Notes: generated from the sequence alone by a model not told the origin. DNA of 64,000 bases from Octopus bimaculoides (GCF_001194135.2 NC_068981.1:120520843-120584842), one strand, 5' to 3'; positions 6,247-63,357 are shown, counted from the first letter of the stretch. Translations and numbers: made by a program.

Positions 6247-7592
6247 TCACTATCAGAACTAGAGGAGAAGTTTCAGGTGTGGAAGCAGGGTCTAGAATTG
6301 AAGGGCCTTAGAGTCAACCTAGCTAAAACCAAAATCCTAATAAGTAGGAAGGTAGATAAAACACAAATCCCTTCAGGTAGATGGCCCTGCTCAGTATGTA
6401 GAAAAGGAGTAGGTAGTAACTCTATAAGATGTACCCGGTGCAAGCTATGGACACATCAGAGGTGCAGCAACATCAAAGGCAGGTTAACTAGGAAGTTAGT
6501 TTTTGTATGTGGCAGATGTTCAGGTGCAATAAACACAGTAAACAAACAGGAAACAACTTCGATCTCATTCCNNNNNNNNNNNNNNNNNNNNNNNNNNNNN
6601 NNNNNNNNNNNNNNNNNNNNNNNNNNNNNNNNNNNNNNNNNNNNNNNNNNNNNNNNNNNNNNNNNNNNNNNNNNNNNNNNNNNNNNNNNNNNNNNNNNNN
6701 NNNNNNNNNNNNNNNNNNNNNNNNNNNNNNNNNNNNNNNNNNNNNNNNNNNNNNNNNNNNNNNNNNNNNNNNNNNNNNNNNNNNNNNNNNNNNNNNNNNN
6801 NNNNNNNNNNNNNNNNNNNNNNNNNNNNNNNNNNNNNNNNNNNNNNNNNNNNNNNNNNNNNNNNNNNNNNNNNNNNNNNNNNNNNNNNNNNNNNNNNNNN
6901 NNNNNNNNNNNNNNNNNNNNNNNNNNNNNNNNNNNNNNNNNNNNNNNNNNNNNNNNNNNNNNNNNNNNNNNNNNNNNNNNNNNNNNNNNNNNNNNNNNNN
7001 NNNNNNNNNNNNNNNNNNNNNNNNNNNNNNNNNNNNNNNNNNNNNNNNNNNNNNNNNNNNNNNNNNNNNNNNNNNNNNNNNNNNNNNNNNNNNNNNNNNN
7101 NNNNNNNNNNNNNNNNNNNNNNNNNNNNNNNNNNNNNNNNNNNNNNNNNNNNNNNNNNNNNNNNNNNNNNNNNNNNNNNNNNNNNNNNNNNNNNNNNNNN
7201 NNNNNNNNNNNNNNNNNNNNNNNNNNNNNNNNNNNNNNNNNNNNNNNNNNNNNNNNNNNNNNNNNNNNNNNNNNNNNNNNNNNNNNNNNNNNNNNNNNNN
7301 NNNNNNNNNNNNNNNNNNNNNNNNNNNNNNNNNNNNNNNNNNNNNNNNNNNNNNNNNNNNNNNNNNNNNNNNNNNNNNNNNNNNNNNNNNNNNNNNNNNN
7401 NNNNNNNNNNNNNGACACGTAAAAGCATCTACTACACTCTCTGAGTGGTTGGCATTAGGAAGGGCATCCTGCTGTAGAAACTCTGCCAAATTTAGATTGG
7501 AGCCTGGTGTTGCCATCCGGTTTCACCAGTCCTCAGTCAAATCGTCCAACTCATGCTAGCATGGAAAGCGGACGTTAAACGATGATGATGAT
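6244..7592 (+). mobile_element. RTE-clade LINE, 5'-truncated younger copy spanning gap 6572-7413
   Basis: Open frame ESLSELEEKFQVWKQGLELKGLRVNLAKTK...WPCSVCRKG...RCTRCKLWTHQRC...VCGRC (PHD-like Cys/His); 3' tail with (GAT)n after the gap. Continuity across the Ns is assumed; the gap length is compatible. Confidence 0.8.
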
Positions 7593-13530: not shown

Positions 13531-13928
13531 TAAGTCAGTAACATGGAAAAATAATAGGAACATAAAAAATAATAATAAGGCAGAATGCTAAACTGAAAGC
13601 ATATTTTAATATAGATGTGTATAAGGAGGACTAAAAATGATTTCTAACCGGCTTTCATTGTATGGCAAATTTTCAAGAAGAGGGAGAATGAAAATGTTTT
13701 TTACAAAAAAGTAAAAAATAATATATGAAAAAATAAATATACCAATACATTATATTGTCTTTGAGCTTTTAAAGTTCAATGGTAATCCATGTAGATAATT
13801 GTTAGGAAGATTAGGATGCATGGAATAAAGAGTTGTGTTTAAAAAAAGAGGGCTGAAAGTTTATGTGTTAAGCAGGAAGTGTGGTGTCAAAACAGGAAGT
13901 GTGTGTAAGGGAAGACAATTCTGTAAAC
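13531..13928 (+). repeat. Unclassified interspersed repeat (same family as the 59.3-60.3 kb arms)
   Basis: aataaggcagaatgctaaactgaaagc...caggaagtgtggtgtcaaaacaggaagt aligns by eye to 59375-59715 and, inverted, to 59925-60270. Confidence 0.85.
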
Positions 13929-14132: not shown

Positions 14133-14318
14133 NNNNNNNNNNNNNNNNNNNNNNNNNNNNNNNNNNNNNNNNNNNNNNNNNNNNNNNNNNNNNNNNNNNN
14201 NNNNNNNNNNNNNNNNNNNNNNNNNNNNNNNNNNNNNNNNNNNNNNNNNNNNNNNNNNNNNNNNNNNNNNNNNNNNNNNNNNNNNNNNNNNNNNNNNNNN
14301 NNNNNNNNNNNNNNNNNN

Positions 14319-24251: not shown

Positions 24252-25050
24252 NNNNNNNNNNNNNNNNNNNNNNNNNNNNNNNNNNNNNNNNNNNNNNNNN
24301 NNNNNNNNNNNNNNNNNNNNNNNNNNNNNNNNNNNNNNNNNNNNNNNNNNNNNNNNNNNNNNNNNNNNNNNNNNNNNNNNNNNNNNNNNNNNNNNNNNNN
24401 NNNNNNNNNNNNNNNNNNNNNNNNNNNNNNNNNNNNNNNNNNNNNNNNNNNNNNNNNNNNNNNNNNNNNNNNNNNNNNNNNNNNNNNNNNNNNNNNNNNN
24501 NNNNNNNNNNNNNNNNNNNNNNNNNNNNNNNNNNNNNNNNNNNNNNNNNNNNNNNNNNNNNNNNNNNNNNNNNNNNNNNNNNNNNNNNNNNNNNNNNNNN
24601 NNNNNNNNNNNNNNNNNNNNNNNNNNNNNNNNNNNNNNNNNNNNNNNNNNNNNNNNNNNNNNNNNNNNNNNNNNNNNNNNNNNNNNNNNNNNNNNNNNNN
24701 NNNNNNNNNNNNNNNNNNNNNNNNNNNNNNNNNNNNNNNNNNNNNNNNNNNNNNNNNNNNNNNNNNNNNNNNNNNNNNNNNNNNNNNNNNNNNNNNNNNN
24801 NNNNNNNNNNNNNNNNNNNNNNNNNNNNNNNNNNNNNNNNNNNNNNNNNNNNNNNNNNNNNNNNNNNNNNNNNNNNNNNNNNNNNNNNNNNNNNNNNNNN
24901 NNNNNNNNNNNNNNNNNNNNNNNNNNNNNNNNNNNNNNNNNNNNNNNNNNNNNNNNNNNNNNNNNNNNNNNNNNNNNNNNNNNNNNNNNNNNNNNNNNNN
25001 NNNNNNNNNNNNNNNNNNNNNNNNNNNNNNNNNNNNNNNNNNNNNNNNNA

Positions 25051-30108: not shown

Positions 30109-30759
30109 CAGTGTTTAACAACCATTTTTTGCCTGTGGATCCTTTGATTACCATTTTACTCAGATGGACACTCATGTTGAAAAAAAGTCCTATTATATTT
30201 TGATAATTAAATATTATTAGGAATTGTAGAAGAAAATTGTTGAAATATTTTGTGTATTGTAAAAGTGTAACCAAGGTGCAGGAGTGGCTGTGTGGTAAGT
30301 AGCTTGCTTACCAACCACATGGTTCTGGGTTCATTCTCACTGCGTGGCACCTTGGGCAAGTGTCTACTCTTATAGTCTCGGGCCGACCAAAGCCTTGTGA
30401 GTGGATTTTGTAGATGGAAACTGAAAGAAGCCTGTCGTATATATGTATATATATAGTGTGTGTATATGTTTGTGTGTCTGTGTTTGACCCCCCCCCCCCC
30501 CCCCCCCACCAACATCGCTTGACAACCGATGGTGGTGTGTTTATGTCCCCATAACTTAGCGGTTCGGCAAAAGAGGCCGATAGAATAAGTACTAGGCTTC
30601 CAAAGAATAAGTCCTGGGGTCAATTTGCTCAACTAAAAGGCAGTGCTCCAGCATGGCTGCAGTCAAATGACTGAAACAAGTAAAAGAATAAAAGAATAAT
30701 TTATTGCAGGTAAATTTTAACAACAAAAACCTTATATGGACCCCGGTTGAGAACAACTA
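30109..30759. mobile_element. hAT MITE interrupted by a SINE
   Basis: Ends cagtgtttaacaacc / ggttgagaacaacta; diverged TSD ATTTACAG/GTTTATAG. Confidence 0.7.
30274..30698 (+). mobile_element. Family-A SINE, full length, young
   Basis: aggtgcaggagtggctgtgtggtaag...gaaacaagtaaaagaataaaagaata. Confidence 0.9.
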
Positions 30760-33219: not shown

Positions 33220-33409
33220 TTTTAGAGTGTATGCCTGTGTGAGACAAAGAGAGAGAGAAAGAAAGAGAAGGAGGGAGGACGGGAGAGATGGAGAAAGATA
33301 GAGGAAAAGAGAGAGGGTGAGAGTAAAGAATGGAGTGGATTGCTGATGGCCATAAAGAGGAAATTCTTCCAAGACATTCCCCACTTCTGTCAACAGATGA
33401 AGAGCAAAT

Positions 33410-33658
33410 CTTTATTCTTTCACTTGTTTCAGTCATTTGACTGCTGCCATGCTGGGGCACTGCCTTGAAGGATCTTAGTCAAACAAATCGACCCCAGGAC
33501 TTATTTTTTAAGCTTAGAACTTATTCTGTCAGTTCCTGGTGCTGAACTGCTAAGTTACAGGGACATAAACACACCAACACCAGTTGTCAAGTGGTGAGAT
33601 GGGAGACAAAGACACACACATACAGATACATACATATATACATACATATATATATATG

Positions 33659-33721
<63 letters not shown>

Positions 33722-34163
33722 CAATAAGAAAATGGAGGGGAATATGTGGTACTCATCAACTTGCAGACATTGTATTATGTCAATTTGCCTGTTTATTTTT
33801 CAACTAAGAGGACAGGACAATAAAAACAATATACATACACATGACATATTATGTCATATCAGTAATAAAAATGACATAATATGTCATATGTGTTTGTATA
33901 TTGTTTTTATTGTCCTGTCCTCTTAGTTGAAAAATAAACAGGCAAATTGACATAATACAATGTCTGCAAGTTGATGAGTACCACATATTCCCCTCCACTT
34001 TCTTAGTGCTATATAAATTAAGGGTAAAATTTCCTTTTACCCGCACCCATTTATTGCACTCGGTAAAAACACTAGTACAATAGTAACTGGGAATCCTTCC
34101 GGCAGTATATTGGCTAGATATTATCTCTTAGTGGGTTGGATTCACAACCCCTAACTTTCTTGG

Positions 34164-34199
<36 letters not shown>

Positions 34200-34362
34200 A
34201 GATGGGCTTCTTTTAGTTTCTGTCTATCTAATTCACTCACAAGGCTTTGGTTGGCGTGAGGCTATAGCAGAAGACACTAACACAAGGTGCCATGCAGTGA
34301 GACTGAACCTGGAACACATGGTTGGGAAGCAAGCTTCTTACTACACAGCCATACCTGCACCT
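33410..34362 (-). mobile_element. Family-A SINE split by an insertion into its internal (TA)n
   Basis: 3' half about 33410-33640 and 5' half about 34195-34362, same orientation, with (TA)n on both sides of the insert. Confidence 0.8.
33721..34168. mobile_element. Asymmetric fold-back element, copy A (unclassified)
   Basis: Arms 33721-33857 and 33871-34009 (3 mismatches plus a 2-nt indel), 13-nt loop, about 155-bp one-sided extension; (TA)n on both flanks. Confidence 0.85.
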
Positions 34363-35789
34363 GTGGTGGGTATCCCAATAAACCAAAAGGATTATAGGAC
34401 TAATCCCAAATATTTAACAGAATACCAATGCAGTAGCGGCTAGGAATAAATAAATAAAGGTCCATGTGGTTCTGTCTTCCGTTTCACTAAATGGTACAAA
34501 ATGGATCTTGTAATGTAACTTCCAACAACCAATGCCTTGTGAATAGAAATGGTAGAAGGAATTGTATGCATAGAAGGCTCATTGTGTGTGTGCGTGCATT
34601 CATGTGTGTGTATGCGCTCCTTTGTGCATGTATGTGTGTGTGTTTATGTTTTGTGCTTTTGCATCAAAAGCATCTGATAAAAAAAAGATGACATCCGACT
34701 GTAAATACCATACCAAAACTGACCTTGCCTATGCCACATAAAAAGCACTCTGTCCACCCTGCTGGGTGGTTGGTATTAGTAAGGACATCAAGCTGTAAAA
34801 ACCATGCCAAAACAGACACAAGTCTGGTGCAGACTCCTGCCTGGTCAGCACCTGTCAAACCGTCCAACCCATGCCAGCAAGGAAGGTAGACATTAAATGA
34901 TAATGATGATGATGATGAAAACTTCCTATTGCACTGTAATTTCAAAGACAAGTGAAATATAAAAAAAAAAGCATTACTTCACTTGTAAAAATAAGTATGT
35001 GTTAGTGACAAGAAGGACATTTGGATGTAAAATAACACCTCAACAAGTATTCAACCCACCTATGCTGGGAAGGAAAAAAATGGATGTAAAGCAAATGAAT
35101 GAATGGATTGACTCATGTACAAATGTATTTTGCTTGGCTGTAAAAATTAGTCACATAATGGCTTTTGAAACAGTTTGGGATGTAGATGGAGCTGAGTGGC
35201 TTCAATTGTTACTGAATACTTCATCAGAATTTGCTCACCTCTACCTGGATGCTGGTATAAAGGATATTCATTAAAAATGTAGGCAAGATTGTGCCGGGCA
35301 CAACTTGCATAATGTTAACGATCCGATAATAATTATATATATTAGAGTATCAATGTAGCATAGTTATGAATAAATAAATATGTTTACAGAGTTATGGATA
35401 TCCACATGTATTTAGTGTTATTGTAAAATAAGATCCACGAGGGTTCTTAACAGCAGCTCAGGATGACGATAAGTGTGAATGTGCATGTGTGTGTGCCTGT
35501 TTGAAGGTGAATATGTATGTGTGTGTGTGTGTATGCATACATGTACATACATCATCATCATCATCTAACATCTGTTTTCCATGCTGGCAAAGGCTGGACA
35601 GTTTGACAGAGGATGGTAAACTGGAAGGCTGCACCAGGCCTCAGTCATCTGTCTTGGCATCGCTTCTATGGCTGAATGTCCTTCCTAATGCCAACCACTT
35701 TACAGAGTGTACTGGGCACTTGTTATGTGGTGCTGGCACAGGTGCTCTAACATATATATACATATATACATATATATATATTTCATCAT

Positions 35790-35995
35790 GTTGAACTGTT
35801 GATCCCTGTACAGTGTTTTCTCCCTCTGTTTTTTTTGGGTTCTCTCTCCATTTATTTTCCCTCTCAATCCTTTCTGTTGAAGAGCATAGGCTCGGAAAGT
35901 CAAAAACTTTTCCATTCTTGCTGAACGTTAAACTAATACACCTGCTTGTTGTTCCCTCACCTGTCTTCGTCTTTTGTTTTCTGTAAATATGAACT
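35790..35995 (+). mobile_element. Putative Penelope-like pseudo-LTR remnant with a degenerate hammerhead motif (35871-35906)
   Basis: UUU-CUGuUGA-A-GAGC(AUAG)GCUC-gGAAAGUC-AAA; flanks related to 18715-18905. Confidence 0.45.
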
Positions 35996-36863
35996 ACACA
36001 CACACACACACACATACATACATACATGCACGTACACACATACATATAGATAACAATGTATTGAACCCATTACTCAGTACACTTGGGAGCTTACTATTAC
36101 TATATAGAATAGTGTTTGGACAAAGATCAAAACACAAAAATAATTGGAAAATATAAATAAATAAATAAATATAATAAAAACAATACAATTTAAGACAGAA
36201 AAAAATACAATATAATATATTCCTTAGATAAATGAAAACATCAATTTTAATAACTGCATAGTTTAGTTTGGTATTTCAAGTGTTAAGTATTGATGAAAAA
36301 CATCACAGTTTATAGAAATTTGATTCACACAAATTTATCAGTTATTCCAACAACAGGGGAATAGACATAAATCGAAGAGAATGAAACAGTTGATTTCTTG
36401 TCAGTGTCAATTGATATAAGATTTCTGTCTCACTTGTTGTGTTTTCCACTCTCTTGCTAACAAATAATAAATAGTGAAACAATTCGTCTTAATTTAGTTC
36501 AACAATTAAACAAATTACATCATTTTTGTTAGTTTTTTATGATAATAGTAATTATTAAAAAAGAAAAAAAAAATTTTTTGAGGAGTGTGTATGTGTATAT
36601 GTGTGTGTGTGTGTAGTATGTTGTGGGCATAATAGAAGACTATGAGTACAATAATAACCATTCTGAGGTGGTGATATTACGTTGTTCATTTCTTGTGATT
36701 CCAATAAAACAAGTAGTGTCTGTGTTATAAGACAGACAGGATGAATACTATTGTTGTTTAGCTAAATGTGACTCCTGATCAAGCAAACCTAATGATTAAA
36801 GATATTCCAGCCATGACTATCCCGTTTTTTAATTTCTAAATATAATATATCTTAAGTCTACAT

Positions 36864-38216
36864 CAGTGGTCCTCAGTCAGGGTTCATATGAGATTTTGTT
36901 GTTAACATTTAGATGCAATAAATTGGTTATATTTCTACAATTCTTTTATTCTTTTACTTGCTTCAGTCGTTTGACTGCAGTCATGCTGGAGTACCACTTT
37001 CATGGGTTTTAGTTGAACAAATCGATCTCTGAACATATTTTTTATAAAATTGCCTAGTACTTATTCTACCAGTATCTTTTGCTGAACCACTAAGTTACAG
37101 GAACATAAATACACCAACACTTGTCAAGTAGTGATGGGGGGTGGGCAAACACAAACACAAGTACATATATACATACATACATACATACATATTATATATC
37201 ATCATCATCATCGTTTAACGTCAGCTTTCCATGCTAGCATGGGTTGGACGATTTGACTGAGGACTGGTGAAACCGGATGGCAACACCAGGCTCCAATCTA
37301 AATTTGGCAGAGTTTCTACAGCTGGATGCCCTTCCTAACGCCAACCACTCAGAGAGTGTAGTAGGTGCTTTTACGTGTCACCTGCACGAAGGCCAGTCAG
37401 GCGATACTGGCAACGGCCATGCTCAAAATGGTGTCTTTTATGTGCCACTCGCACAAGCCAGTCCAGGGGCACTGGCAACGATCTCACTCGAAAATCCTAC
37501 GGAGGCCAGTCAGGTGGTACTGGCAACGGCCACGCTCAAAATATATATATATATATATATATATANNNNNNNNNNNNNNNNNNNNNNNNNNNNNNNNNNN
37601 NNNNNNNNNNNNNNNNNNNNNNNNNNNNNNNNNNNNNNNNNNNNNNNNNNNNNNNNNNNNNNNNNNNNNNNNNNNNNNNNNNNNNNNNNNNNNNNNNNNN
37701 NNNNNNNNNNNNNNNNNNNNNNNNNNNNNNNNNNNNNNNNNNNNNNNNNNNNNNNNNNNNNNNNNNNNNNNNNNNNNNNNNNNNNNNNNNNNNNNNNNGT
37801 GTGTGGATTAGGTAGATGGATACTGAAAGAAGCCTGTTGTATATGTATATATATTGATGTGTGTCCTTGTGTTCATGTTTGTCACCTCCTCCACTTGATA
37901 ACTAGTGTTGGTGTATTCACATCCCCGTAACTTATTGGTTCACCAAAAGGGACTGATAGAATAAGTACAAGGCGAAGAAAAAAAGTACTAGGGTCAATTA
38001 ATTTGATTAAAATTCCACATCCTCATGGTGGTGCCCCAGCATGGCCATAGTCTAATGACTGAAGAAAGCAAAAGATAAAAGTTAAATTCTTAGTAGAATT
38101 TGATTGTAAAAATATAACAAGATTTTTTTTTATATACAGCAAATGGCTATGGAGGTCCAGTAGTGTAAAACAGGAAACAAAAGGATCCATAGCTAAAAAG
38201 GGGCTAAGAACTACTG
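36864..38216. mobile_element. hAT MITE expanded by nested SINE and RTE-tail insertions
   Basis: Ends cagtggtcctcag / ctaagaactactg; TSD GTCTACAT/GACTACAT (7/8); contains a SINE (-), an RTE tail (-), a gap and a SINE (+). Confidence 0.7.
37198..37540 (-). mobile_element. Young RTE 3'UTR with tandem hairpin subrepeats
   Basis: (ATC)n tail, CCATGCTAGCATGG, three GCCAGT-8nt-ACTGGC units. Confidence 0.85.
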
Positions 38217-40166
38217 GACTACATCATGTATTTTGTCCACTCCCACTTTATTTTTTTAACCCTTTAGCATTCAGATTATTCTATCAAATGTAACATAAAA
38301 CATGAAGAATATTTTGACAAGAAAGCTATTTAGCTTCAAGTGAGGCTTGATTGAACACATCTATGATAGCAGGGTATTATTTGAGGGAGAATTGTCTGCT
38401 ATTTGTAGCTAGTCAATTGTTTGATGATATATAAGAACTTTCTCATTGTTGTGTGAATGTTGGAACAGAATATCAGAGCAGAGAAAGCCTAATGTAATCT
38501 ATATATTTCATATACAACATCATATAATGTTGCCTAACATGATGTACCTTGATGGATGGCCTGTATATTAAACAGTTGTTTAGCCCAAGGGAAACTCTGC
38601 ATGAGCAGACCTATGATCAAGAATACACCAGCCACGACCATCCCATTGTTTTTGAAGTTACAAGGAATCAAGGATAACATTATTTAATGCAGTTTTCTGA
38701 GATGGTAGAATGAAATTTGAGGGAAATATGGCTGCTATTTCTAGCAGGTCACACTGTCATATAGTGACTCCTTGTAACTCCATCATGTCCTTGAGTTTGG
38801 GCACCATGTATTCTGGACTACTTAAGATGGTGAGGTGTTTATTTGAAAAAGAGTTGACTGGTATGTCTTTTATAAACCCACAGAATTTTTTCCTTTTCCC
38901 CTGCTCTTTGCTATAATCTGCCATACTCTCCTTCAACTACAGTGGCCACTTTAGGTCTTCAACCTTGCATATTATAAAGTAATCAAAATTAGAGTTGGTA
39001 CCACAAAAAGTATCTAGTACACTTTGTGAGTGGTAGACATTAGGAATGGCATCCAGCTGTAGAAACTAAGCCAAAGTAGATATTGGTGCATGATGTAGTC
39101 ATCAGACTTGTCAGACCATTCAACCCATGCTGACATGGAAACTGGATATTAAATGACGATGATGGTGATGATGATAGAGTTAAAATGGAACTCCAGTGGA
39201 ATGTGAATTTACAAAACAAAAGCTACATTCAATTATGCATAGTAAAACAGAAAACCCCACCCCAAAACTGAGGACATTAGTGTTGTTCTGTGTTAGCAAA
39301 AGGTAAAACAAATAATTTGGTTTCAAATTTTGGCACAAGGCCAGGAAGTTTGAGGGAGTGGGTAAGTGAATTACATTGACCCCAGTCATCAACTGGTACT
39401 TATTTTATTAGCCATGGAAGGATGAAAAGCAAGGTTGGCCTTGGCGGAATTTGAATTCGGAATGTAAAGACGGATCAATATAAATAATTTAAACAGTGTA
39501 ATAACTTTAATGCAGTAAAGAAAAAGAGAAATCTAATGTTTTGGGTAAAATCTTTATCAGAGAGATCACTCACTGCACATATCAAGGAAACCTCAGTCAC
39601 ACCCTGCACCTAAACAGTACTGAACTAGAATCCTTAAAGCTGCTACAAATACCAGCTCTAATTTCCAGTGAGAATCACTTGTGGTAATAGCACCTCTTCA
39701 ACATAGCAAAGGCTGTATCTCAAAAACTGGCTATCTTATTCAAAGAAAGAAAGCAATTCAGCCACTAAAATCTTTTAACCCCCAACAAAGTTCAGGTGAA
39801 ACCCACAATGAAGTAATGCTCTCACACCTGGGACAGTATTGCAGCTACATATACAGACATACTAGACTACATTCAAAGAAAAGCCACACAGATGATTGTC
39901 AGGAAGTCACTCAACACACTCCAACCTCTGGCCCAAAGATGTGCTGATTCTTATCTGTCTTTTTTACCACTTTTATAGTAGCCTCTGGTCCTCTGTGAAG
40001 GCTAGTCTCATGTCATCTACATTCAGACACTTTCAGGCCATTCATCTCTTTTTCTCTTGTCTTCCATATTGTGTTCTCATTCAGGCCTTTTCCTAAATAT
40101 GACAACCAGTCCTTACCCTCCAGAACATTAATCCTTTGCACATATTTTCCCATAGTTATCAACATA

Positions 40167-40511
40167 CAAAGGTTGGCCAAAAAGTTCATAGGCTAACCAT
40201 AGAATGTGACTTTCAACATTGTCCCTCTTGTAATTCACACACTTCTTCCATCAGTGTGCAGAGCTTGGCACCCATTGGTGGAGAAGCTTTCATCCTGTTG
40301 CGCAAAAAAGTTATCAACAGTGGATATGATGTCATCCTAACTGTGACACTGGTTCCCAGTCAAGCGCTTTTTCATGTTGGGGAACAGGTGATAGACACAT
40401 GGGGCCAAATCAAGAGAGCAGGGAGGGTGATTAACCAGTTCAAAATCACAATAATGTACAGTAGCCGTTGAAAGCAAGGACTTGTGCGCTGAAGCATTGT
40501 CTTGGTCAACC
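40167..40511 (-). pseudogene. mariner transposase C-terminal fragment with a TIR
   Basis: Minus strand QDNASAHKS...NHPPCSLDLAPCVYHLFPNMKK; TA|caaaggttggccaaaaagttc end. Confidence 0.8.
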
Positions 40512-40755
40512 AGGGTTTATGTCAAGTGTATTAAAAACAATGACAGCAAAATCAACAAAATGGCTCATTTGTGATATTGCATTTTGTTCATGAAAACTTT
40601 TGTGCTTCAATTATTAAAATGCCAAAAATATTTTGCTTTACAATCATAAATGTAAACAAATGAACAGTCTTTACATCAATAAAAATGAAAACAGACAAAA
40701 AGAAAACAAACCACACACATTCATACAGATGCATGTGTGTGTGTGCATATATATA

Positions 40756-41995
40756 CTGGGTGCGGTGAATAAATTGTCATCTAAATTATGCAAAAATGAA
40801 AACAACACTGACATCTCATTTTAACAGATACATTTACCAAAATTACATAAAAATATCTTGAAATATTAAAGAGTAAATTTATTCAATAGAATTGCCATTG
40901 GCTTCAACTGCGATCTTCAGATGACTTCGGAATCTTCTGCAACTCTCCAGGACAGTCTCCTTGTTTAAGTTGGTGAACGCTGCCATTATCCTTGCCTTCA
41001 GTTCATCTTTGGAGTTTTGTTGGTCTCTCACACAACTGCGCCCCACACATAATAATCAAGGAGGTTGCAGTCTGGGGAGTTGGGTGGCCAGATGTTAGGG
41101 ATGATGTGGTCGTAGAAACTGTCTGACATCCATGACTGGGTCCTCCTGCTTGTGTGGCATGGTGCAGAGTCCTGTTACCAGACACAGGGTCTTCCAACAG
41201 CCACCATTTTGACCCAGGGCAGCACTACTTCCTCCAGGCACTTGATGTAGGCTTCCGTGTTGAGTTGGAGGCCGTGTGGGAAGATGAATGGAGGCATAAC
41301 ATTGCCATCACTAGTGATCACTCCAAACACCATGATGTTGACTAGATGTTTGATTTTTATCACTCTCAGTACATGTTTTGGGGACAAAGCAAGCTAACAG
41401 TTGTTCTGTGTGTTCATCATCTGATCCTGGCAAAAATGTTTCTCATTTGAGAAAAACCAAAGCATGTTTGGCTGGAGGGGATGCTTGTCCTTTATGGCTT
41501 GGGATAAAAATTGGCCCTTTCTCATCCTGTACGAAGTGTGCAGAATGTCTCTGCTAAGAAACTCAGACACTCCCATGTCTTTGGCGATGGACCTGATTGA
41601 CTTGTAGGGATTGATGTCAATCATGGCCTGGATATCCCCAACAAATTCAGAAGATCTTTTCTCATCAGAAAGATCAGAGTGAGTTTTCAGAACTTCTACA
41701 TCTTCATAATCACCATTAGACTCATCCAACTCTTTCTGAATCCTTTGCACTGTCTTCAGATTGACACCCAAACACTCTGAAATGGTCATATTGAAGCTTC
41801 CGTTGCAAATGCCAAGCAGTACAACATGTCGTCTCCAAATTTCTGGCAGAGTGAATTGTGTCATGGTGATTTTTCTCACAGATGGTGCCCAACTGACCCT
41901 ACTATAATGCGTAGTCGACAAAATCAAAAACAAATAATGTACTTGCACGAAATTAAAAATATAAAATGGTGACAAAATTTACCCATCGCACCCTG
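40756..41995 (-). mobile_element. Full-length maT/DD37D Tc1-mariner transposon (1240 bp), transposase pseudogenised
   Basis: About 26-bp imperfect TIRs (CAGGGTGCGATGGGTAAATT / CTGGGTGCGGTGAATAAATT), TA on both sides; WFFSNEK (first D mutated to N), W*QDSAPCH...PNSPDCNLLDY with 37 residues between D2 and D3. Confidence 0.92.
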
Positions 41996-42002
41996 TATAT
42001 TG

Positions 42003-42237
42003 TGAAGGCATGTGGCCAGATTATGAATTTCATTCCCTGACTGGGCAGCACATTGTGTTCTTGAGCAAAACTCTTCATTTCACATTGGTCCAGTTCCCCT
42101 TCGATCAGTGGGGGATCGTTGGCCTGCTCACCTATACAGCAGGGTGGTGTCATTTGAAGGCTAAAACAATGCAAAAGCGCATTGTGACTAGCGATGTGTA
42201 ACAACATCTGATAGCCTGGTTGGTCACGTGTGATCAT
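42003..42237 (+). mobile_element. Family-C SINE
   Basis: cattgtgttcttgagcaaaactcttcatttcac core; tail ggtcacgtgtgatcatgta. Confidence 0.7.
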
Positions 42238-42238
42238 G

Positions 42239-42268
<30 letters not shown>

Positions 42269-42273
<5 letters not shown>

Positions 42274-42736
42274 CCAAGAGAGTTAGGGGTTGAGGATCCA
42301 ACCCACTAAGGGATAATATCTATCCAATATACCGCTGGGAGGGTACCCAATTATTGTTACACTAGTGTTATACCAAGTGCAATAAGTGGGTGCGGGTAAA
42401 AGGGAGTTTTTACTCTAAATTTATATAGCAATAAGAAAATGGAGTGGAATATGAGGTACTCATCAACTTGCAGACACTGTACTCTGTTGATTAATCTGTT
42501 TATTTTATAACCAAAAGAACAATAAAGACAATATACAGCTGTAAGATTTTGTCCCTTCTCCGATTGCTAGATGTCCTTTAAATTTGTAATCTTAATTGTT
42601 GCTATGACATAGTATGTCATAAGTGTCTGTATATTGTCTTTATTGTCATTTTGGTTATAAAATAAACAGATTAATCAACAGAGTACAGTGTCTGCAAGTT
42701 GATGAGTACCTCATATTCCCCTCCATTTTCTTATTG

Positions 42737-42737
<1 letters not shown>
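42269..42737. mobile_element. Asymmetric fold-back element, copy B (opposite orientation to copy A)
   Basis: Extension 42269-42427, arms 42428-42538 and 42628-42737 (about 3 mismatches), about 89-nt spacer; (TA)n on both flanks. Confidence 0.85.
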
Positions 42738-42785
<48 letters not shown>

Positions 42786-44510: not shown

Positions 44511-45765
44511 TTAGGTCAGCCTATAAATAATGTGATTTTTTTCAATTGCATGAACTAAAAATCGGAGGGGGACAAGATAAACTACTTGCATCAACTTGCT
44601 ATAAAAGCAGGTAGTAATTTTACCTTGTTCTTTTTCTTAGTGCAAGTTTTGAAGAGTGCAGTTCGAATTTAACAGTTAATTTTTCAAAGCTATAATAGAA
44701 GTGACAAAGGAGCATATTTGGCATATTTTGCTTTATGAGTTCAATAAATGCAACAATGAAACAAAAAGTGTGAGGAATATTAATGCAGTATATGGGGATC
44801 AGACAATAAGCGTAAGCCAGTGTCAATGGTGGTTCTAGAAATTCCGAGCTGGAAATGACAGCCTAAAAGATGAGTCTCATCCTAGAAGGTCTGTAGAGCT
44901 TGATGAGGACATCCTGCAAACCCTGGTGGAAAAAAATTCCATAGTAACTGTTGCGGAACTAGCAGAAAAGCTTGGATTTGGTCATTCAACCATTCATTGA
45001 CACCTGTGTGCCATTGCAAATTGGCCCAATGGGTCTAATCGCATACAGAGAGTGAATGTGTGCTCTTCTTTGCTGTCACATATCATGGACGAACCATTTT
45101 GAACTGAATAGTGACTGGTGATGAGAAAGGGGTTCTCTATAAAAATGTGAAGCACTGAAGACAGTGGGTAGGGAAAGGGGGAACAACGGCACCCCAGGCT
45201 AAAGAAAGTCTTCATCCATGTAATGTGTTATCTGTTCAGTGGAATATGAAAGGTTTAGTCCACTTTGAACTTTTAAACACAAACCAAACAATAACAAAGG
45301 AAATTGACTGCGAGCAGCATCAGCGACTTATGTCAGTGCTTGAAGTAAAACGACCATCTTTGGTTTCGAGACGAAAGGTGTTCTTCCATCAGGATAATGC
45401 TTGGCCACATACAGTGAGGATGACATTCCAAAGGCTGGAGCAGTTTGAATGGGAAACGATGCCACACCCACCATATTCACCAGACATTGCCCCATCTGAT
45501 TACCATTTATTCCAGACTTCAAAATCATTTGGACAGAAAAAATATGAATTCTGTAAATGAGGTCAGAACAGTCATGAAGCTGTATTTTTAGTCAAGGACA
45601 AGTGAATTTTGGAAGTGAGGCCTTGCAAGTCTACCAGATAGATGGAAGAACATTATAGAAAATGAAGGAGAGTTTATTTTAGATTAAAAAAAAAAAACTT
45701 TGTTTATCTTAATTTTGAAAAATAAAAGAAGTATAAAAAAGCCGCATTATTTATTGAATGACCCA

Positions 45766-54205: not shown

Positions 54206-54608
54206 TACTCTTTACTCTTTTACTTGTTTCAGTCATTTGACTGTGGCCATGCTAGAGCACCACCTTTAGTCGAGCAAATCGACCCCAGGACTTATTCTTT
54301 GGATGCCTAGTACTTATTCTATCGGTCTCTTTTGCCGAACCGCTAAGTTACGGGGACGTAAACTCACCAGCATCGGTTGTCAAAGTGATGTTGAGGGGAC
54401 AAACACAGACACACACACATACATATACATATATATACATATATACGACAGGCTTCTTTCAGTTTCCGTCTACCAAATCCACTCACAAGGCTTTGGTCGA
54501 CCTGAGGCTATAGTAGAAGATACTTGCCCAAGTTGCCACGCAGTGGGAATGAACCCAGAACCATGTGGTTGGTAAGCAAGCTACTTACCACACAGCCACT
54601 CCTGCACT
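54206..54608 (-). mobile_element. Family-A SINE, full length, young
   Basis: Very similar to 9990-10389. Confidence 0.9.
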
Positions 54609-55938
54609 ATGTATACAAATCTACATAATTTTGTGTAATATACCATTTTTTAATTAAAACTATGCTTTTACTTTGTACCATAATTGTTAAATAGATCAAC
54701 TTTGCAAGAATCTAAAGTAAAATAGACTTAAATTACCAGCAGATATTCTAAACATGCTTTCATCATAGGTTTGTTCATTCAGAGTCCATCTCAGACTAAA
54801 CAATACCAACAAAGGAGCTTCTTGATCACTCTGAGACAATTTGTAAACAGAGAATGACTGATGTTCCCAAAAGTTTGACACTAACTCACAGGGGGGGAAC
54901 AAATACTCTTGAAAGTACTATTTACTGAAGAAAAAGAAGGAATAATGATCAAAATATAATGAGTATATATACAATACAACTGGAGAAAGAAATTATAGAA
55001 AAGAATTTGAAAGTGACTAAAGACTCATGTGTCAAAAGTTCAAATAACAACAGCCGCTTCAGGTTCAAAATTTTTTTTGAAAAGTGGATAGAAGTCACAA
55101 TTTTCAGGTTCATAAAATCAGATTGGTAACTGACATTCAACAGAACATTTTGACATATCAAGAAACAAATAGAAAATGAAAAGAATTAAAAATGTGAAAT
55201 TCTCTACATCTCTTTTCCTTACAATTCCTTCATTTCAGATTCAAATTTCCAATCCCACCAAATATCATGATGAAAGGGTGATCTCCCTTGCTATAAATGC
55301 AACTGCTAAAGGAAAATATGTAAATATAACAGCATCTTTTGCATGATCCTAAAAGACTAAAATCATTTTTTCATGATGTAATTATTTCAGTTTTAACTCA
55401 TGGTCACAGATCAAGTCATTTGCCAATAAAATATCGCTCTGAAACCTAAACAAATGATTAGTGGCTTAATCAAAGAAGGAAAGGCAGTGTCCATGACCTT
55501 TTACAAGACCTCCAACATTGGTAAAAAGAAGGGAGGAAATTATCTCAATCTAGAGACTGGCCTGAATGCTTGCAATGAAGAAGACCCTGTTAAAGGAACA
55601 ATAAGGGCTGCTGGTAGTAGGAATCTGAGTTGCAGATTAAGCCTACCAACCAAGAACAAAAGCAGTTCCTATGATGGGCTTCCATGCAGTTTCCATAATC
55701 CAAATGTCACCACAAGGCTATGGCTGTCCTGAAGTTATGGTAGAAACTTGTGTAAGGTTCCATGTAGTGGAACTGAACTAAAAAACTACATACTTGCAAA
55801 ATGAACATCTTAACCACACTGCTATGTTTTGTTCATTCAGAGTCCATCTAAGGCTAAACAATAACAATGAAGGAGCTTCTTGATCACTCAACTTGCTAGA
55901 AATAGCAGGCACATCTGAAATCATACCTGCATCTAAAC

Positions 55939-59331: not shown

Positions 59332-60268
59332 AATCAGTAAATGGTGGGGTTGTGTTAACCGCACGTGGAGAAATAATAGGAAAATAAAAAATAATAATAA
59401 TAAGGCAGAATGCTAAACTGAAAGCATATTTTAATATAGATGTGCATAAGTAGGATTAAAAAGGATTTCTAACGGCTTTCATTGCATGGCAAATTTTCAA
59501 GAAGAGGGAAAATGAAAATAATGTTTTTTACAAAAATGTATAAAAAAATAAATATACCAATACATTATATTGTCTTTGAGTTTTCAAAGTTCAATGGTAA
59601 TCCATGTAGATAATTGTTAGATAGATTAGGATGCATGGAATTAAGAACGGTGTTGTGTTTAAAAAAAGCTGAGAGTTTGTGTTAAACAGGAAGTGTAGTG
59701 TCAAAACAGGAAGTTTCATTGAATACATATAAATTTACTTCTTGATTCTCTAAGAACAGACATAAACTTCCTGTTGACAAAGAGTCCAGAACTCCAACTA
59801 AAGAGTATAAAACCCACAGAATTGTCTTCCCTTACACACACTTCCTGTTTAACACATAAACTTATTGTTTTTGTATCAATCTGTGTATATAGATCCATAG
59901 TGATCATAATAAAAATTTTATACACTTCCTGTTTTGACACCACACTTCCTGCTTAACACAAACTTTCAGCCCTCTTTTTTTAAACACAACTCTTTATTCC
60001 ATGCATCCTAATCTTCCTAACAATTATCTACATGGATTACAATTGAACTTTAAAAGCTCAAAGACAATATAATGTATTGGTATATTTATGTTTTTATATA
60101 TTTTTAATATTTTTGTAAAAAACATTATTTTCATTTCCCTCTTCTTGAAAATTTGCCATGCAATGAAAGTTGGTTAGAAATCCTATTTAATTCTCCTTAT
60201 GCACATCTGTAATAAAATATGCTTTCAGTTTAGCATTCTGCCTTATTATTATTATTATTTTTTATTTT

Positions 60269-60628: not shown

Positions 60629-60756
60629 GATATTGTTGTATTTGGGGATGGTCATGTTGCCAGTTTAGCCAATTGCTTAGTTCCTTATAGATCTTATTCT
60701 TTATATTCACCATTGGCTAAACTGGCAACATGACCATCCCCAAATACAACAATATC
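60629..60756. repeat. Perfect 45-bp inverted repeat with a 38-nt loop
   Basis: gatattgttgtatttggggatggtcatgttgccagtttagccaat and its exact reverse complement. Confidence 0.95.
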
Positions 60757-61584: not shown

Positions 61585-63357
61585 AAGCAAATTTTTCACA
61601 CCAGAGCCAAATGAGCAGAAAGAAAGAAAGAAAAGAAAACAACAAGATGGTCATGGCTAGACAGCTTTTGATCATAGGTCTACTTGATAAGAATTGACAT
61701 GAGGTTAAACAACAACAATATCATCAACATCTTATCAACTTAACCAGCTGAAATTTTAGAAAGAGTATCAACTGTTAAGTTTGTTTTATTCTAACAATTT
61801 ATAAATGTCCAAAATTAACATTACTAAACAGCCATCTTGGAAGGTTTTGGAATAGTATTAACTGTGGCAGAAAATATCAATGCCAAAGATGCAATGTCTG
61901 CTACACACCATGCAGATAAATAGCGTGTTTGATACATCTGACTGGAACCAGACTTTCCTTAGAAGTCATTATATCACTGTTTCTTTCATCAAGTTCTTTA
62001 CACAAGAAAGTTCTCTTTTCAAATTTGTCTCTATCTGAAGCAACTATTTTAAAACACTTGTTAAGTATCAGAATGGTCCTGCTGATTAGACCAGTAAATT
62101 TGATCTAATCACAGTGGTTACTTCCAGCTGAGTGGATTGTACTATTTAAGAATTAAGTGTCTTGGTCATAAACAACATAGTACTGATGATGAGTTATCAA
62201 CACTTTACCAATGTAGGAGTCAATGAAGGGTACCTGACCTGCTAGAAACAGCAGCTGGCTACACATCACACCTTATCATCTCAAAAAAAAGGAAGGTAAC
62301 ATTGGACGATGTAGTCTTATCTTTTATTGGTTTCAGTCATCGGGTTGTGGCCATGTTGGGGCACCATCTGGAAGGGTTTAGTTGAACAAATTGCCTTCAG
62401 TACAATATTTTTTTGCAAAACCAAGTACTTATTCTATTGGTCTATGTGTGATGAACTGCCAATGCACAGGGATGTAAACAAACTAACACTGATTGTCAAG
62501 TGGTGGTGGGTGATAAACAAAGACACACATATATGTACACACACATACCTGTATATATATATATATATATATACATCCCTCTGCTAAGTGCCTCTGGTTC
62601 TTCTATACTGCTTTTGGCCTGAACAGCCATTCAGGCACAAGGACCCATCAAGATGAAGAGGCTTAATCACTTGCTACAGATTAACTACTTGGGAAACAAG
62701 TTAATGCTGATGATATATGAGACACACACACTCACATACATATGGTGCGATGGGTAAATTGTCACCATTTAGAATTTTTAATTTTGTTTTTGATTTTGTT
62801 GACTACACAGTATAGTAGGGTCAGCTTGGGCACTGTCTGTGAGAAAAACACCACCATGATGCAATTCACTCTGCCAGAAATTTGGAAACGACATGCTGTG
62901 CTACCTGGCATTCATGCCGGAAGCTCCAGTATGAAGATTTCAGAGTGTCTAGGTGTCAATATGAGGACACACATACACACAAAAGACAGGCTTCTTTCAG
63001 TTTCCATCTATCAAATCCATGGCAAGTGTGGAGGGTAACTCTCTAGTAGATGACACTTGCCCAAAGTTCCATGTAATGGGACTGAACCTAGAACCATGCG
63101 ATTAGAAAGCAAATTTTTCACACCAGAGCCAAATGAGCAGAAAGAAAGAAAGAAAAGAAAACAACAAGATGGTCATGGCTAGACAGCTTTTGATCATAGG
63201 TCTACTTGATAAGAATTGACATGAGGTTAAACAACAACAATATCATCAACATCTTATCAACTTAACCAGCTGAAATTTTAGAAAGAGTATCAACTGTTAA
63301 GTTTGTTTTATTCTAACAATTTATAAATGTCCAAAATTAACATTACTAAACAGCCAT
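61585..63357 (+). repeat. 251-bp identical direct duplication (61585-61835 / 63107-63357)
   Basis: No difference seen by eye. Confidence 0.9.
62743..62968 (+). mobile_element. maT (DD37D) 5'-end fragment
   Basis: TIR ggtgcgatgggtaaattgtcacc; MMQFTLPEIWKRHAVL...SECLGVN matches the N-terminus of 40756-41995. Confidence 0.85.

What the first reader, a model, noticed from the sequence alone, without database searches (positions are those of the whole stretch)
33721..42737. Asymmetric fold-back element whose inverted arms are copy-specific (33.7 kb vs 42.3 kb)
Seen: two copies (33721-34168; 42269-42737, opposite orientation) with the layout arm-spacer-inverted arm-about 155 bp one-sided extension. 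Within each copy the arms differ at only about 3 positions, yet between copies more than 15 differences are mirrored in both arms (e.g. acattgtattatgtcaatttgcc in A vs acactgtactctgttgattaatc in B). The spacer is 13 nt in A and about 89 nt in B. Established: ordinary TIR MITEs have no one-sided extension, whereas Penelope-like elements make inverted partial pseudo-LTRs with a tail extension and Helentron/HINE elements have asymmetric sub-terminal repeats. Inference: one arm is regenerated from the other at each insertion (hairpin priming or template switch), or the arms are homogenised to keep pairing. This is the best candidate here for an undescribed element or mechanism.
Basis: partly seen in the sequence, partly recalled or inferred. 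Interest (0 to 1): 0.75.

Follow-up and report, generated by a model that had tools for sequence, protein, structure and literature searches.

The report
TA-microsatellite-targeting hairpin-plus-tail mobile element
Two diverged copies of a small non-coding mobile element in an octopus-like genome each carry a long hairpin whose two arms match each other far better than they match the other copy, which looks most like the known insertion pattern of Penelope-like retroelements, not a new mechanism.

Summary
Copy A (33721-34168, +) and copy B (42269-42737, -) share the layout outer arm, spacer, inverted inner arm, 159-nt one-sided extension. Arms differ by 2.6-2.7% within a copy and by 14-17% plus a 5-nt indel between copies. 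15 of 16 outer-arm differences recur in the inner arm (p=4e-14). All four ends abut pure (TA)n.

Copy A interrupts the internal TA/CA microsatellite of an abundant SINE that has intact paralogs, so it is a real insertion. The mobile unit has no terminal inverted repeat, hammerhead or tRNA head, and the window holds no further copy. The inverted junction differs between copies. In A it falls on an 8-nt self-complementary motif of the unit.

Best reading (about 0.45): a short non-autonomous retroelement inserted by target-primed reverse transcription into (TA)n, Penelope-like (Naiad/Neptune type). This gives two head-to-head copies of one template, with a tail at one end. Rivals are a Helentron-like rolling-circle element, a foldback DNA transposon with arm homogenisation, and a LINE-dependent retroposon.

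The host genome could not be searched, so no partner was tested. The gap at 37566-37798 lies between the copies and touches neither. The family is probably undescribed but of a known kind. Interest is moderate.

The parts
33659..33720 (.). Pure (TA)n flank on the arm side of copy A. It is part of the TA/CA microsatellite array at 33626-33720.
33721..33858 (+). Copy A outer arm. It ends in the 17-nt palindrome ATGACATATTATGTCAT (33841-33857). The boundary with (TA)n is ambiguous by 1-2 nt.
33859..33871 (+). Copy A 13-nt loop. Together with the next 9-10 nt it is homologous to the continuation of B's outer copy (15/23 identical, P=2e-4). Homology ends abruptly at 33881.
33872..34009 (+). Copy A inner arm, the inverted copy of the outer arm. 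There are 3 mismatches in 116 aligned nt.
34010..34168 (+). Copy A one-sided extension ('tail'). It starts with TATATAAATT and contains two small stem-loops shared with B: 34022-34042, and 34128-34154 which lies 14 nt from the end.
34166..34195 (.). Pure (TA)15 flank on the extension side of copy A.
33409..33657 (-). Host SINE of copy A, 3' half. The SINE reads on the minus strand. Intact paralogs lie at 54209-54625 and 30258-30692.
34196..34367 (-). Host SINE of copy A, tRNA-like head half. With 33409-33657 it defines the filled site. Paralogs carry only a short impure CA/TA run where A sits.
42241..42271 (.). Pure (TA)15.5 flank on the extension side of copy B.
42269..42427 (-). Copy B extension, 13.9% diverged from A's. 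Its stem-loops are at 42283-42309 and 42394-42415.
42428..42538 (-). Copy B inner arm. It stops 27 nt short of the point reached by A's arms and by B's own outer copy.
42539..42626 (-). Copy B spacer (88 nt), a one-sided continuation of the outer copy. 42581-42626 is homologous to A (arm end, palindrome at 42604-42620, loop). 42539-42580 is unique sequence with no similarity to the rest of the element.
42627..42737 (-). Copy B outer arm. There are 3 mismatches in 111 nt against the inner arm.
42738..42785 (.). (TA)24 flank on the arm side of copy B.
37566..37798 (.). Assembly gap between the two copies. It is not part of the element.

Best explanation
A and B are two insertions of a short, non-coding mobile element that targets (TA)n microsatellites. 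The two copies come from different subfamilies.

The most likely mode of insertion is target-primed reverse transcription of the Penelope-like (PLE) type, as in Naiad or Neptune elements. The template is an RNA that reads upstream region, arm, UAUAUA, 159-nt extension. Both strands of the cut (TA)n target prime cDNA synthesis. One strand starts at the distal end of the template and so includes the extension. The other starts at the internal UAUAUA just after the arm and so has no extension.

Alternatively, a single cDNA snaps back on a short self-complementary motif and copies itself. Either way the two copies meet head to head at a point that differs from one insertion to the next. That makes a hairpin whose arms are identical at birth and carry whatever variants the source template had.

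Shown here: mobility, the (TA)n target, asymmetry without terminal inverted repeats, arm-to-arm copying, different junctions in A and B, and uneven conservation between copies.

Inferred: the RNA intermediate, dual priming or self-priming, and a PLE reverse transcriptase/GIY-YIG endonuclease partner.
For: 1. Mobility and target. All four ends abut pure (TA)n, although (TA)n arrays cover only about 1.7% of the window. A splits the internal TA/CA microsatellite of a SINE that has intact paralogs.
2. Arm copying. 14 mirrored substitutions and a mirrored 5-nt indel give p=4e-14, against 2.6-2.7% within-copy arm divergence.
3. Junctions differ between copies. In A the junction lies where the unit's ATGACATA can pair with TATGTCAT. 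Arkhipova 2013 reports palindromes at inverted PLE junctions and reads them as self-priming.
4. No inverted repeat joins the two true ends of the unit, so a symmetric cut-and-paste mechanism is unlikely.
5. Both ends on the tail side (GC|TATATAAATT after the inner arm and GGATTA|(TA)n at the extension end) are followed by TA repeats. That would give two TA-microhomology start sites.
6. Published PLE features match:
   - Naiads prefer (TA)n targets, are heavily 5'-truncated, often carry an adjacent inverted truncated copy and a tail at one end, and lack hammerheads. Octopus spp. carry Naiad families.
   - A purified PLE protein cuts and extends both target strands and starts reverse transcription at two template sites. 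The tail is the sequence between those sites.
7. Divergence between A and B is uneven. The outer 49 nt of the arm show 1/49 differences against 20/67 further in (p=5.5e-5), and the extension has conserved blocks (p=0.002). This points to selection in active source lineages, not decay after insertion.
8. The window is from Octopus or a close relative.
Against: - No reverse transcriptase, GIY-YIG endonuclease or pLTR homology could be tested, and none was seen among the window ORFs examined.
- The tail is 159 nt, against the 30-40 nt described for PLEs.
- Both copies have the tail on the same side and arms of similar length. That fits a fixed short unit better than random 5' truncation of a long element.
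- Neither copy has a partial tandem (pLTR).
- No hammerhead ribozyme was found.
- Craig et al. describe cephalopod Naiads as anciently inactivated remnants, whereas the arms here are 97% alike.
- There are only two copies. No further copy was found in 40 kb of O. vulgaris.
- Arm-to-arm gene conversion after insertion would give the same mirrored pattern.
Confidence: 0.45

Rival explanations
1. A Helentron/HINE-like or Helitron-like rolling-circle element. The outer arm would be a greatly enlarged 5' subterminal repeat and the inner arm its 3' partner. The extension would be the 3' tail with its terminal stem-loop. The single-stranded intermediate folds into the hairpin, and mismatch repair homogenises the arms at each cycle.
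For: - The layout is the same in outline: an inverted repeat at the 5' end, its partner subterminal at the 3' side, and a 10-bp stem-loop shared by both copies 14 nt from the 3' terminus. HINE palindromes lie 8-35 bp from the 3' end.
- The element is asymmetric, with no true terminal inverted repeat.
- The variable body between the repeats resembles HINEs.
- (TA)n offers many A|T sites, the canonical Helitron target.
Against: - The Helentron TT target and the T-runs at the boundaries are absent.
- The repeats are 111-138 nt, not 11-13 nt, and lie 159 nt from the 3' end, not 38-60 nt.
- The canonical 5'-TC / CTRR-3' termini do not fit in either orientation.
- No Rep/helicase partner could be tested.
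Confidence: 0.15
2. A foldback-type or long-TIR non-autonomous DNA transposon, for example a TA-targeting Tc1/mariner relative. It would have captured a 159-nt flank as a fixed part of the unit. The arms stay alike through intramolecular gene conversion or hairpin mismatch repair in genomic copies.
For: - Long inverted repeats that are more alike within a copy than between copies are documented for Galileo: 98-100% within a copy against about 80-97% between copies.
- TA is the Tc1/mariner target, and Tc1/mariner remnants lie in the window (41394-42237, 45225-45560).
- Other long-inverted-repeat elements occur in this window and in O. vulgaris loci.
Against: - The unit that moved includes the extension in both copies, yet its two ends share no significant inverted repeat (p=0.28 and 0.9).
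- The extension is not part of any other repeat in about 104 kb of Octopus-type sequence (the window plus two O. vulgaris loci).
- B's inner arm is shortened and B carries about 41 nt of unique extra spacer, which would need a complex rearrangement.
- The uneven divergence between copies argues for subfamilies, not old copies kept alike by conversion.
Confidence: 0.15
3. A LINE-dependent, SINE-like retroposon with a 3' stem-loop and a (TA)n tail. It would be inserted by target-primed reverse transcription into (TA)n. The 5' inverted arm would be made by twin priming or snap-back, with a non-PLE reverse transcriptase as partner.
For: - A shared stem-loop lies 14 nt upstream of a (TA)n run that is 15.0 and 15.5 pure units long in the two copies. 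This is the arrangement used by LINE/SINE pairs whose reverse transcriptase recognises a specific 3' stem-loop and repeat tail (from my own knowledge of such pairs, not checked here).
- The junction in A shows microhomology.
Against: - No tRNA, 5S or 7SL head and no pol III boxes were detected.
- Classical twin priming gives an inversion, not an inverted duplication.
- A (TA)n-specific LINE is not known to me in cephalopods (not tested).
Confidence: 0.12
4. Not a mobile element. The two loci would be an old inverted segmental duplication, or an assembly artefact, with the palindrome arms kept alike by gene conversion.
For: There are only two copies, in opposite orientation, 8 kb apart, with a scaffold gap between them.
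Against: - Similarity stops exactly at the (TA)n on both sides of both copies.
- A interrupts a SINE at its microsatellite, and intact paralogs of that SINE exist.
- The termini are conserved while the interior is diverged.
- Two different sequences share one architecture, each with 2.6-2.7% arm mismatches, which an artefact would not produce.
Confidence: 0.03

Closest known systems
Penelope-like element insertions, especially Naiad/Neptune-type (Craig et al. 2021, PMC8557442; Arkhipova et al. 2013, PMC3846280; Frangieh et al. 2024, PMC11167929)
   Same: - (TA)n microsatellite target.
- Head-to-head inverted truncated copies whose junction varies.
- A palindrome at the inverted junction.
- An extension at one end only.
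- No hammerhead, as in Naiads.
- No terminal inverted repeat spanning the unit.
- Naiad families are reported in Octopus spp.
   Different: - The tail is 159 nt, against 30-40 nt.
- No pLTR tandem is present.
- The element has no coding sequence and no demonstrated sequence link to any PLE.
- Both copies show the same overall configuration.
- Cephalopod Naiads are reported to be old remnants.
Helentron-associated interspersed elements (HINE / DINE-1; Thomas et al. 2014, PMC4067079)
   Same: - Asymmetric ends: an inverted repeat at the 5' end, with its partner set back from the 3' end.
- A small palindrome close to the 3' terminus.
- A variable central part.
- Non-coding.
   Different: - HINE subterminal repeats are 11-13 bp and lie 38-60 bp from the 3' end. 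Here they are 111-138 nt and lie 159 nt from the end.
- The HINE target is TT with T-runs at the boundaries. Here the target is (TA)n.
Foldback-like DNA transposons with long TIRs (Galileo, P superfamily; Marzo et al. 2013, PMC3573991)
   Same: Long inverted arms that are nearly identical within a copy but diverged between copies and subfamilies. Arm length is variable.
   Different: Galileo is symmetric, has 7-bp target-site duplications and a transposase partner. Here there is a conserved one-sided 159-nt extension and no inverted repeat between the true ends.
Animal non-LTR retrozymes (non-autonomous PLE derivatives; bioRxiv 10.64898/2026.07.22.740005)
   Same: Short non-coding elements proposed to depend on PLE machinery.
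   Different: Retrozymes are tandem units that carry hammerhead ribozymes. Here there is no tandem arrangement and no hammerhead.

Membership tests
Penelope-like element (PLE) insertion | PLE-type reverse transcriptase plus GIY-YIG endonuclease, encoded by the element or by a partner that shares its 3' sequence | not testable with these tools
   The host genome could not be searched. DNA pattern scans of the metagenome, viral and prokaryote collections gave 0 hits. No such ORF was seen among the window ORFs checked.
Penelope-like element (PLE) insertion | An adjacent inverted 5'-truncated copy forming head-to-head inverted repeats, with a junction that differs between insertions | tested here: met
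   Arms are 97% and 96% complementary. The junction lies at about 33880 in A and at 42538/42539 in B, with about 41 nt of extra one-sided sequence in B.
Penelope-like element (PLE) insertion | An optional short extension ('tail', 30-40 bp) at one end only | tested here: inconclusive
   A one-sided extension is present in both copies, but it is 159 nt long. Published tails are 30-40 bp.
Penelope-like element (PLE) insertion | Insertion bias for AT-rich or (TA)n microsatellite targets (Naiads) | tested here: met
   All four ends lie in pure (TA)n. A lies in the TA/CA microsatellite of a SINE that has intact paralogs.
Penelope-like element (PLE) insertion | Partial tandem organisation giving pseudo-LTRs | tested here: not met
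   Neither copy contains a direct repeat of element sequence. Short truncated insertions need not show one.
Penelope-like element (PLE) insertion | Hammerhead ribozyme in the pLTR (canonical clades; absent from Naiads) | tested here: not met
   Rfam gave no hammerhead match even at E up to 10. Only a TTGATGAG box is present, one base away from CUGAUGAG. Its ATG opens a 12-codon frame that runs to the arm end in 3 of 4 arms. This is a weak lead.
Helentron / HINE | 11-13-bp subterminal inverted repeats, 2-4 nt from the 5' end and 38-60 bp from the 3' end | tested here: not met
   The repeats are 111-138 nt long, start 0-2 nt from the 5' end, and lie 159 nt from the 3' end.
Helentron / HINE | A palindrome 8-35 bp from the 3' terminus | tested here: met
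   The stem-loop TTAGTGGGTTG...CAACCCCTAA ends 14 nt from the terminus. The stem is identical in both copies and the loop differs.
Helentron / HINE | Insertion within TT, with T-runs at the boundaries | tested here: not met
   The boundaries are (TA)n|GCAAT and GGATTA|(TA)n.
Canonical Helitron | 5'-TC and CTRR-3' termini, with insertion between A and T | tested here: not met
   A 5'-TC start is possible only in the B(+) orientation, and the 3' end would then be GCTA. In the other orientation neither terminus fits. The A|T target is compatible with (TA)n but cannot be resolved.
TIR DNA transposon / MITE / Foldback | Terminal inverted repeats at both ends of the unit that moves | tested here: not met
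   The outer-arm terminus compared with the reverse complement of the extension terminus gave p=0.28 (A) and p=0.9 (B) against shuffles. An earlier weaker test gave p=0.012 for A only.
TIR DNA transposon / MITE / Foldback | A target-site duplication of fixed length | tested here: inconclusive
   Both flanks are (TA)n, so any even-length TA duplication, or none, is compatible.
SINE (LINE-dependent retroposon) | A pol III promoter head (tRNA, 5S or 7SL derived) | tested here: not met
   ARAGORN found no tRNA, and Rfam gave no tRNA, 5S or 7SL match at E up to 10.

The most novel reading that the evidence does not exclude
This could be an undescribed class of non-autonomous element whose inverted arm is rebuilt from a single-arm template at every insertion. 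Priming would occur at two TA-anchored start sites 159 nt apart in a (TA)n target. The partner could be an unrecognised enzyme, or a PLE behaving in a way not yet described (a very long tail and a fixed short unit). If so, each genomic copy would be a fossil record of the dual-strand priming step that has so far been seen only in vitro.
Probability: 0.15. Interest if true: 0.7.

Novelty: new member of a known kind. Interest (0 to 1): 0.38.

Why it matters
If the PLE reading holds, these copies are compact natural products of the least understood step of Penelope-like retrotransposition. That step is cleavage and extension of both target strands, with reverse transcription starting at two sites in the template. 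Here the products sit in a microsatellite target where the junctions can be read base by base.

A genome-wide set of such copies would give three things:
- the distribution of junctions and start sites;
- a test of whether palindromes guide the joining of the two copies;
- a clock, from arm-to-arm divergence, for dating insertions.

The element also bears on how (TA)n arrays and hairpins break short-read assemblies of cephalopod genomes. In addition, it provides roughly 130-bp perfect hairpins that could feed small-RNA or RNA-editing pathways if transcribed.

If it is instead an ordinary foldback or Helentron-type element, it is just one more unannotated repeat family.

Tried and rejected
- Rfam at gathering threshold on the whole window, and at E up to 10 on both copies. 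Only generic long-hairpin microRNA-precursor models matched, all below threshold. No hammerhead and no tRNA. ARAGORN found nothing.
- Exact-pattern scans with one arm motif and two extension motifs gave 0 hits: the arm motif in all three collections, one extension motif in metagenome and viral contigs, the other in prokaryote genome contigs. No collection of eukaryotic genomes was available.
- Searching the protein database with a 65-aa ORF that spans the arm/extension junction, hoping to find spurious ORF calls on other copies: no candidates.
- Full-text search of papers for six sequence strings from the element: 0 papers. No supplements are held for Craig et al..
- Reaching Octopus DNA through repeat-encoded ORFs. 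A SINE-derived ORF hit two 'Octopus vulgaris' hypothetical proteins, which gave two 20-kb loci (L002, L003) that share more than 130 repeat matches with the window but hold no copy of this family. A Tc1-like ORF led to an ENA contig from a different organism (L001), also without a copy.
- Profile (nhmmer) searches for degenerate copies in the window: none found.
- The idea that the extension is a third, degenerate arm copy, or that the unit has short terminal inverted repeats: not significant.
- The idea that B's extra spacer is a nested fragment of the same element: not significant.
- B's neighbouring Tc1-type transposase remnant as a possible partner: a (TA)15 run separates them and A has no such neighbour, so this was rejected.

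Full report
**1. What is there**

Copy A spans 33721-34168 on the + strand and copy B spans 42269-42737 in reverse orientation. Both read: outer arm, spacer, inverted inner arm, then a 159-nt extension present on one side only.

The repeat finder gives A arms 33712-33842 / 33888-34018 at 97% complementarity and B arms 42416-42538 / 42627-42749 at 96%. As single strands the two copies fold at -168 and -145 kcal/mol, with z = -31 and -29 against shuffles. A has a 13-nt loop and B an 88-nt spacer.

BLASTN and profile searches find only these two copies in the 64 kb.

**2. The gap**

The N run at 37566-37798 lies between the copies, 3.4 kb from A and 4.5 kb from B, and inside neither. Nothing here is coding, so reading frame is not an issue.

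The left edge of the gap is (TA)12. The right edge begins 139 nt into a SINE copy, so the missing SINE head fits within the 233 N. Continuity cannot be tested without reads. Only the relative orientation and spacing of A and B depend on it.

**3. The copy-specific arms are real and far beyond chance**

In a four-arm alignment the arms differ at 3/116 (A) and 3/111 (B) positions within a copy. Between copies they differ at 16-19/111 positions plus a 5-nt indel.

Fifteen of the 16 outer-arm differences fall on the same columns as inner-arm differences, 14 of them with the same bases (Fisher p = 4e-14). No column groups the two outer arms against the two inner arms.

The mirrored indel shows that one arm is copied from the other. 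Paired point mutations selected to keep base pairing would not produce it.

The extension differs by 13.9% between copies, about as much as the arms do. So A and B separated long before the arms of each copy were last made alike.

**4. It is a mobile element that lands in (TA)n**

All four ends abut pure (TA)n runs of 31 and 15 units for A and 15.5 and 24 units for B. The roughly 19 (TA)n arrays cover only about 1.7% of the window.

A's flanks are the two halves of one copy of an abundant tRNA-derived SINE. Intact paralogs (54209-54625, 30258-30692) carry only a short impure CA/TA run at the point where A sits. Similarity between the A and B loci ends at the (TA)n.

**5. Asymmetry is intrinsic**

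The two true ends of the unit share no significant inverted repeat (p = 0.28 and 0.9; an earlier looser test gave p = 0.012 for A only). The extension is not a third arm copy and is not part of another repeat.

The extension contains two small stem-loops present in both copies. One is a 10-bp stem that ends 14 nt from the terminus. Its stem is identical in A and B while its loop differs.

**6. The junctions differ**

Anchored on the shared 17-nt palindrome, A's loop and the next 10 nt are homologous to the continuation of B's outer copy (15/23 identical, P = 2e-4). After that, homology stops dead (0/20).

So in A the unit's own sequence runs to about 33880. It turns back where ATGACATA can pair with TATGTCAT, a pre-existing 8-bp stem with a 13-nt loop.

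In B the outer copy continues about 41 nt further into unique sequence. B's inner arm stops 27 nt short of the point that A's arms and B's own outer copy reach.

**7. Divergence between A and B is uneven**

The outer 49 nt of the arm show 1/49 differences, against 20/67 further in (p = 5.5e-5). The extension has conserved blocks (columns 27-52 and 98-160) around a variable middle (p = 0.002).

I chose the window boundaries after seeing the data. Even so, the contrast is strong. It suggests that most of the divergence arose under selection in transposition-competent lineages. On that view A and B belong to two subfamilies.

**8. What it is not**

- There is no hammerhead, tRNA or other Rfam family.
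- The element contains no protein-coding ORF of note.
- The Helentron TT target and 11-13-bp subterminal repeats are not met, and canonical Helitron termini do not fit.
- It has no pol III head.

**9. Comparison with the literature**

- Craig et al. 2021 report that Naiad PLEs prefer (TA)n, are heavily 5'-truncated, often have an adjacent inverted truncated copy and a 30-40-bp tail at one end, and lack hammerheads. They also report that Octopus spp. carry Naiad families, described as old remnants.
- Arkhipova et al. [quoted passage not shown] They also describe palindromes at inverted junctions and interpret them as self-priming.
- Frangieh et al. 2024 show that a purified PLE protein cleaves and extends both target strands. 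Reverse transcription starts at two template sites, and the tail is the stretch between them.

The element here has the same topology and target. The inner-arm end (GC|TATATAAATT) and the extension end (GGATTA|(TA)n) are both followed by TA repeats. That would let a (TA)n target prime at either site.

The differences are the 159-nt tail, the absence of a tandem pLTR, and the same configuration in both copies. No sequence link to any RT could be tested.

A weak lead: the conserved arm end contains TTGATGAG, one base away from the hammerhead CUGAUGAG box. Its ATG opens a 12-codon frame that runs to the arm terminus in 3 of 4 arms. In PAc the ORF start sits at the hammerhead, beginning at the start of stem II. 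[quoted passage not shown]

**10. Rivals**

- Long inverted repeats that are near-identical within a copy but diverged between copies are known for the foldback-like transposon Galileo. The mirrored pattern alone is therefore not new, and gene conversion after insertion cannot be excluded.
- A Helentron-like reading fits the outline and the 3' stem-loop, but fails on the target and on scale.
- A LINE-dependent reading fits the stem-loop followed by an equal-length (TA)15 tail, but there is no SINE head.

**11. Organism**

A SINE-derived ORF from the window matches only 'Octopus vulgaris' hypothetical proteins. Two O. vulgaris loci share more than 130 repeat matches with the window. The window is therefore from Octopus or a close relative. 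Those 40 kb contain no copy of this family.

**12. Verdict**

The best explanation is a short non-autonomous retroelement inserted PLE-style into (TA)n (confidence about 0.45). The family is probably undescribed but of a known kind. The decisive step is a genome-wide census of copies and a search for the partner, which these tools could not do.

Noticed in passing
window 33409-33657 + 34196-34367; paralogs at 54209-54625 and 30258-30692: Copy A sits inside the internal TA/CA microsatellite of an abundant tRNA-derived SINE. Intact paralogs serve as empty sites. The filled site has about 46 TA units in total, against roughly 10 in the paralogs.
   Followed up: yes
window 34166-34195 and 42241-42271: The (TA)n run on the extension side has almost the same length in both copies (15.0 and 15.5 pure units). 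The arm-side runs differ (31 and 24 units). The extension-side run might therefore come in with the element as a tail.
   Followed up: partly
window gaps 14133-14318, 24252-25049, 37566-37798: Several assembly gaps abut (TA)n arrays. The gap at 14133-14318 has them on both sides. The assembler appears to break at TA microsatellites. Whether hairpin elements are hidden in these gaps is unknown.
   Followed up: partly
window 59440-60215 (related half-copy at 13606-13902): An unrelated symmetric element of about 775 bp with long terminal inverted repeats. Its arms are 87-91% alike and it has no one-sided extension.
   Followed up: partly
window 60629-60756: A perfect 45-nt inverted repeat with a 38-nt spacer (100% complementary). 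One flank has a weak match in O. vulgaris locus L003. Its nature is unknown.
   Followed up: partly
window 5900-6570; L002 6933-7198: A head-to-head inverted repeat of a retroelement fragment whose ORF carries a PHD-type zinc finger, next to a gap. The same family also lies in inverted arrangement in an O. vulgaris locus.
   Followed up: partly
window 41394-42237 (-), 62732-63038 (+), 45225-45560 (+): Tc1-type transposase N-terminal remnants (homologues carry PF01498 and PF13384) and a mariner Transposase_1 fragment. The first lies directly beside copy B but is separated from it by (TA)15.
   Followed up: yes
L002 15134-15418; L003 20008-20270: O. vulgaris loci hold other hairpin structures. 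One is a head-to-head palindrome of a SINE 5' part that includes unique flanks. The other is a symmetric 263-bp MITE-like insertion (arms 97% alike) inside a SINE. Neither is related to this family.
   Followed up: partly
window 33930-33975 and 42690-42737 (all four arms): The conserved arm end contains TTGATGAG, one base away from the hammerhead CUGAUGAG box. Its ATG opens a 12-codon frame that runs to the arm terminus in 3 of 4 arms. No hammerhead fold was detectable.
   Followed up: partly
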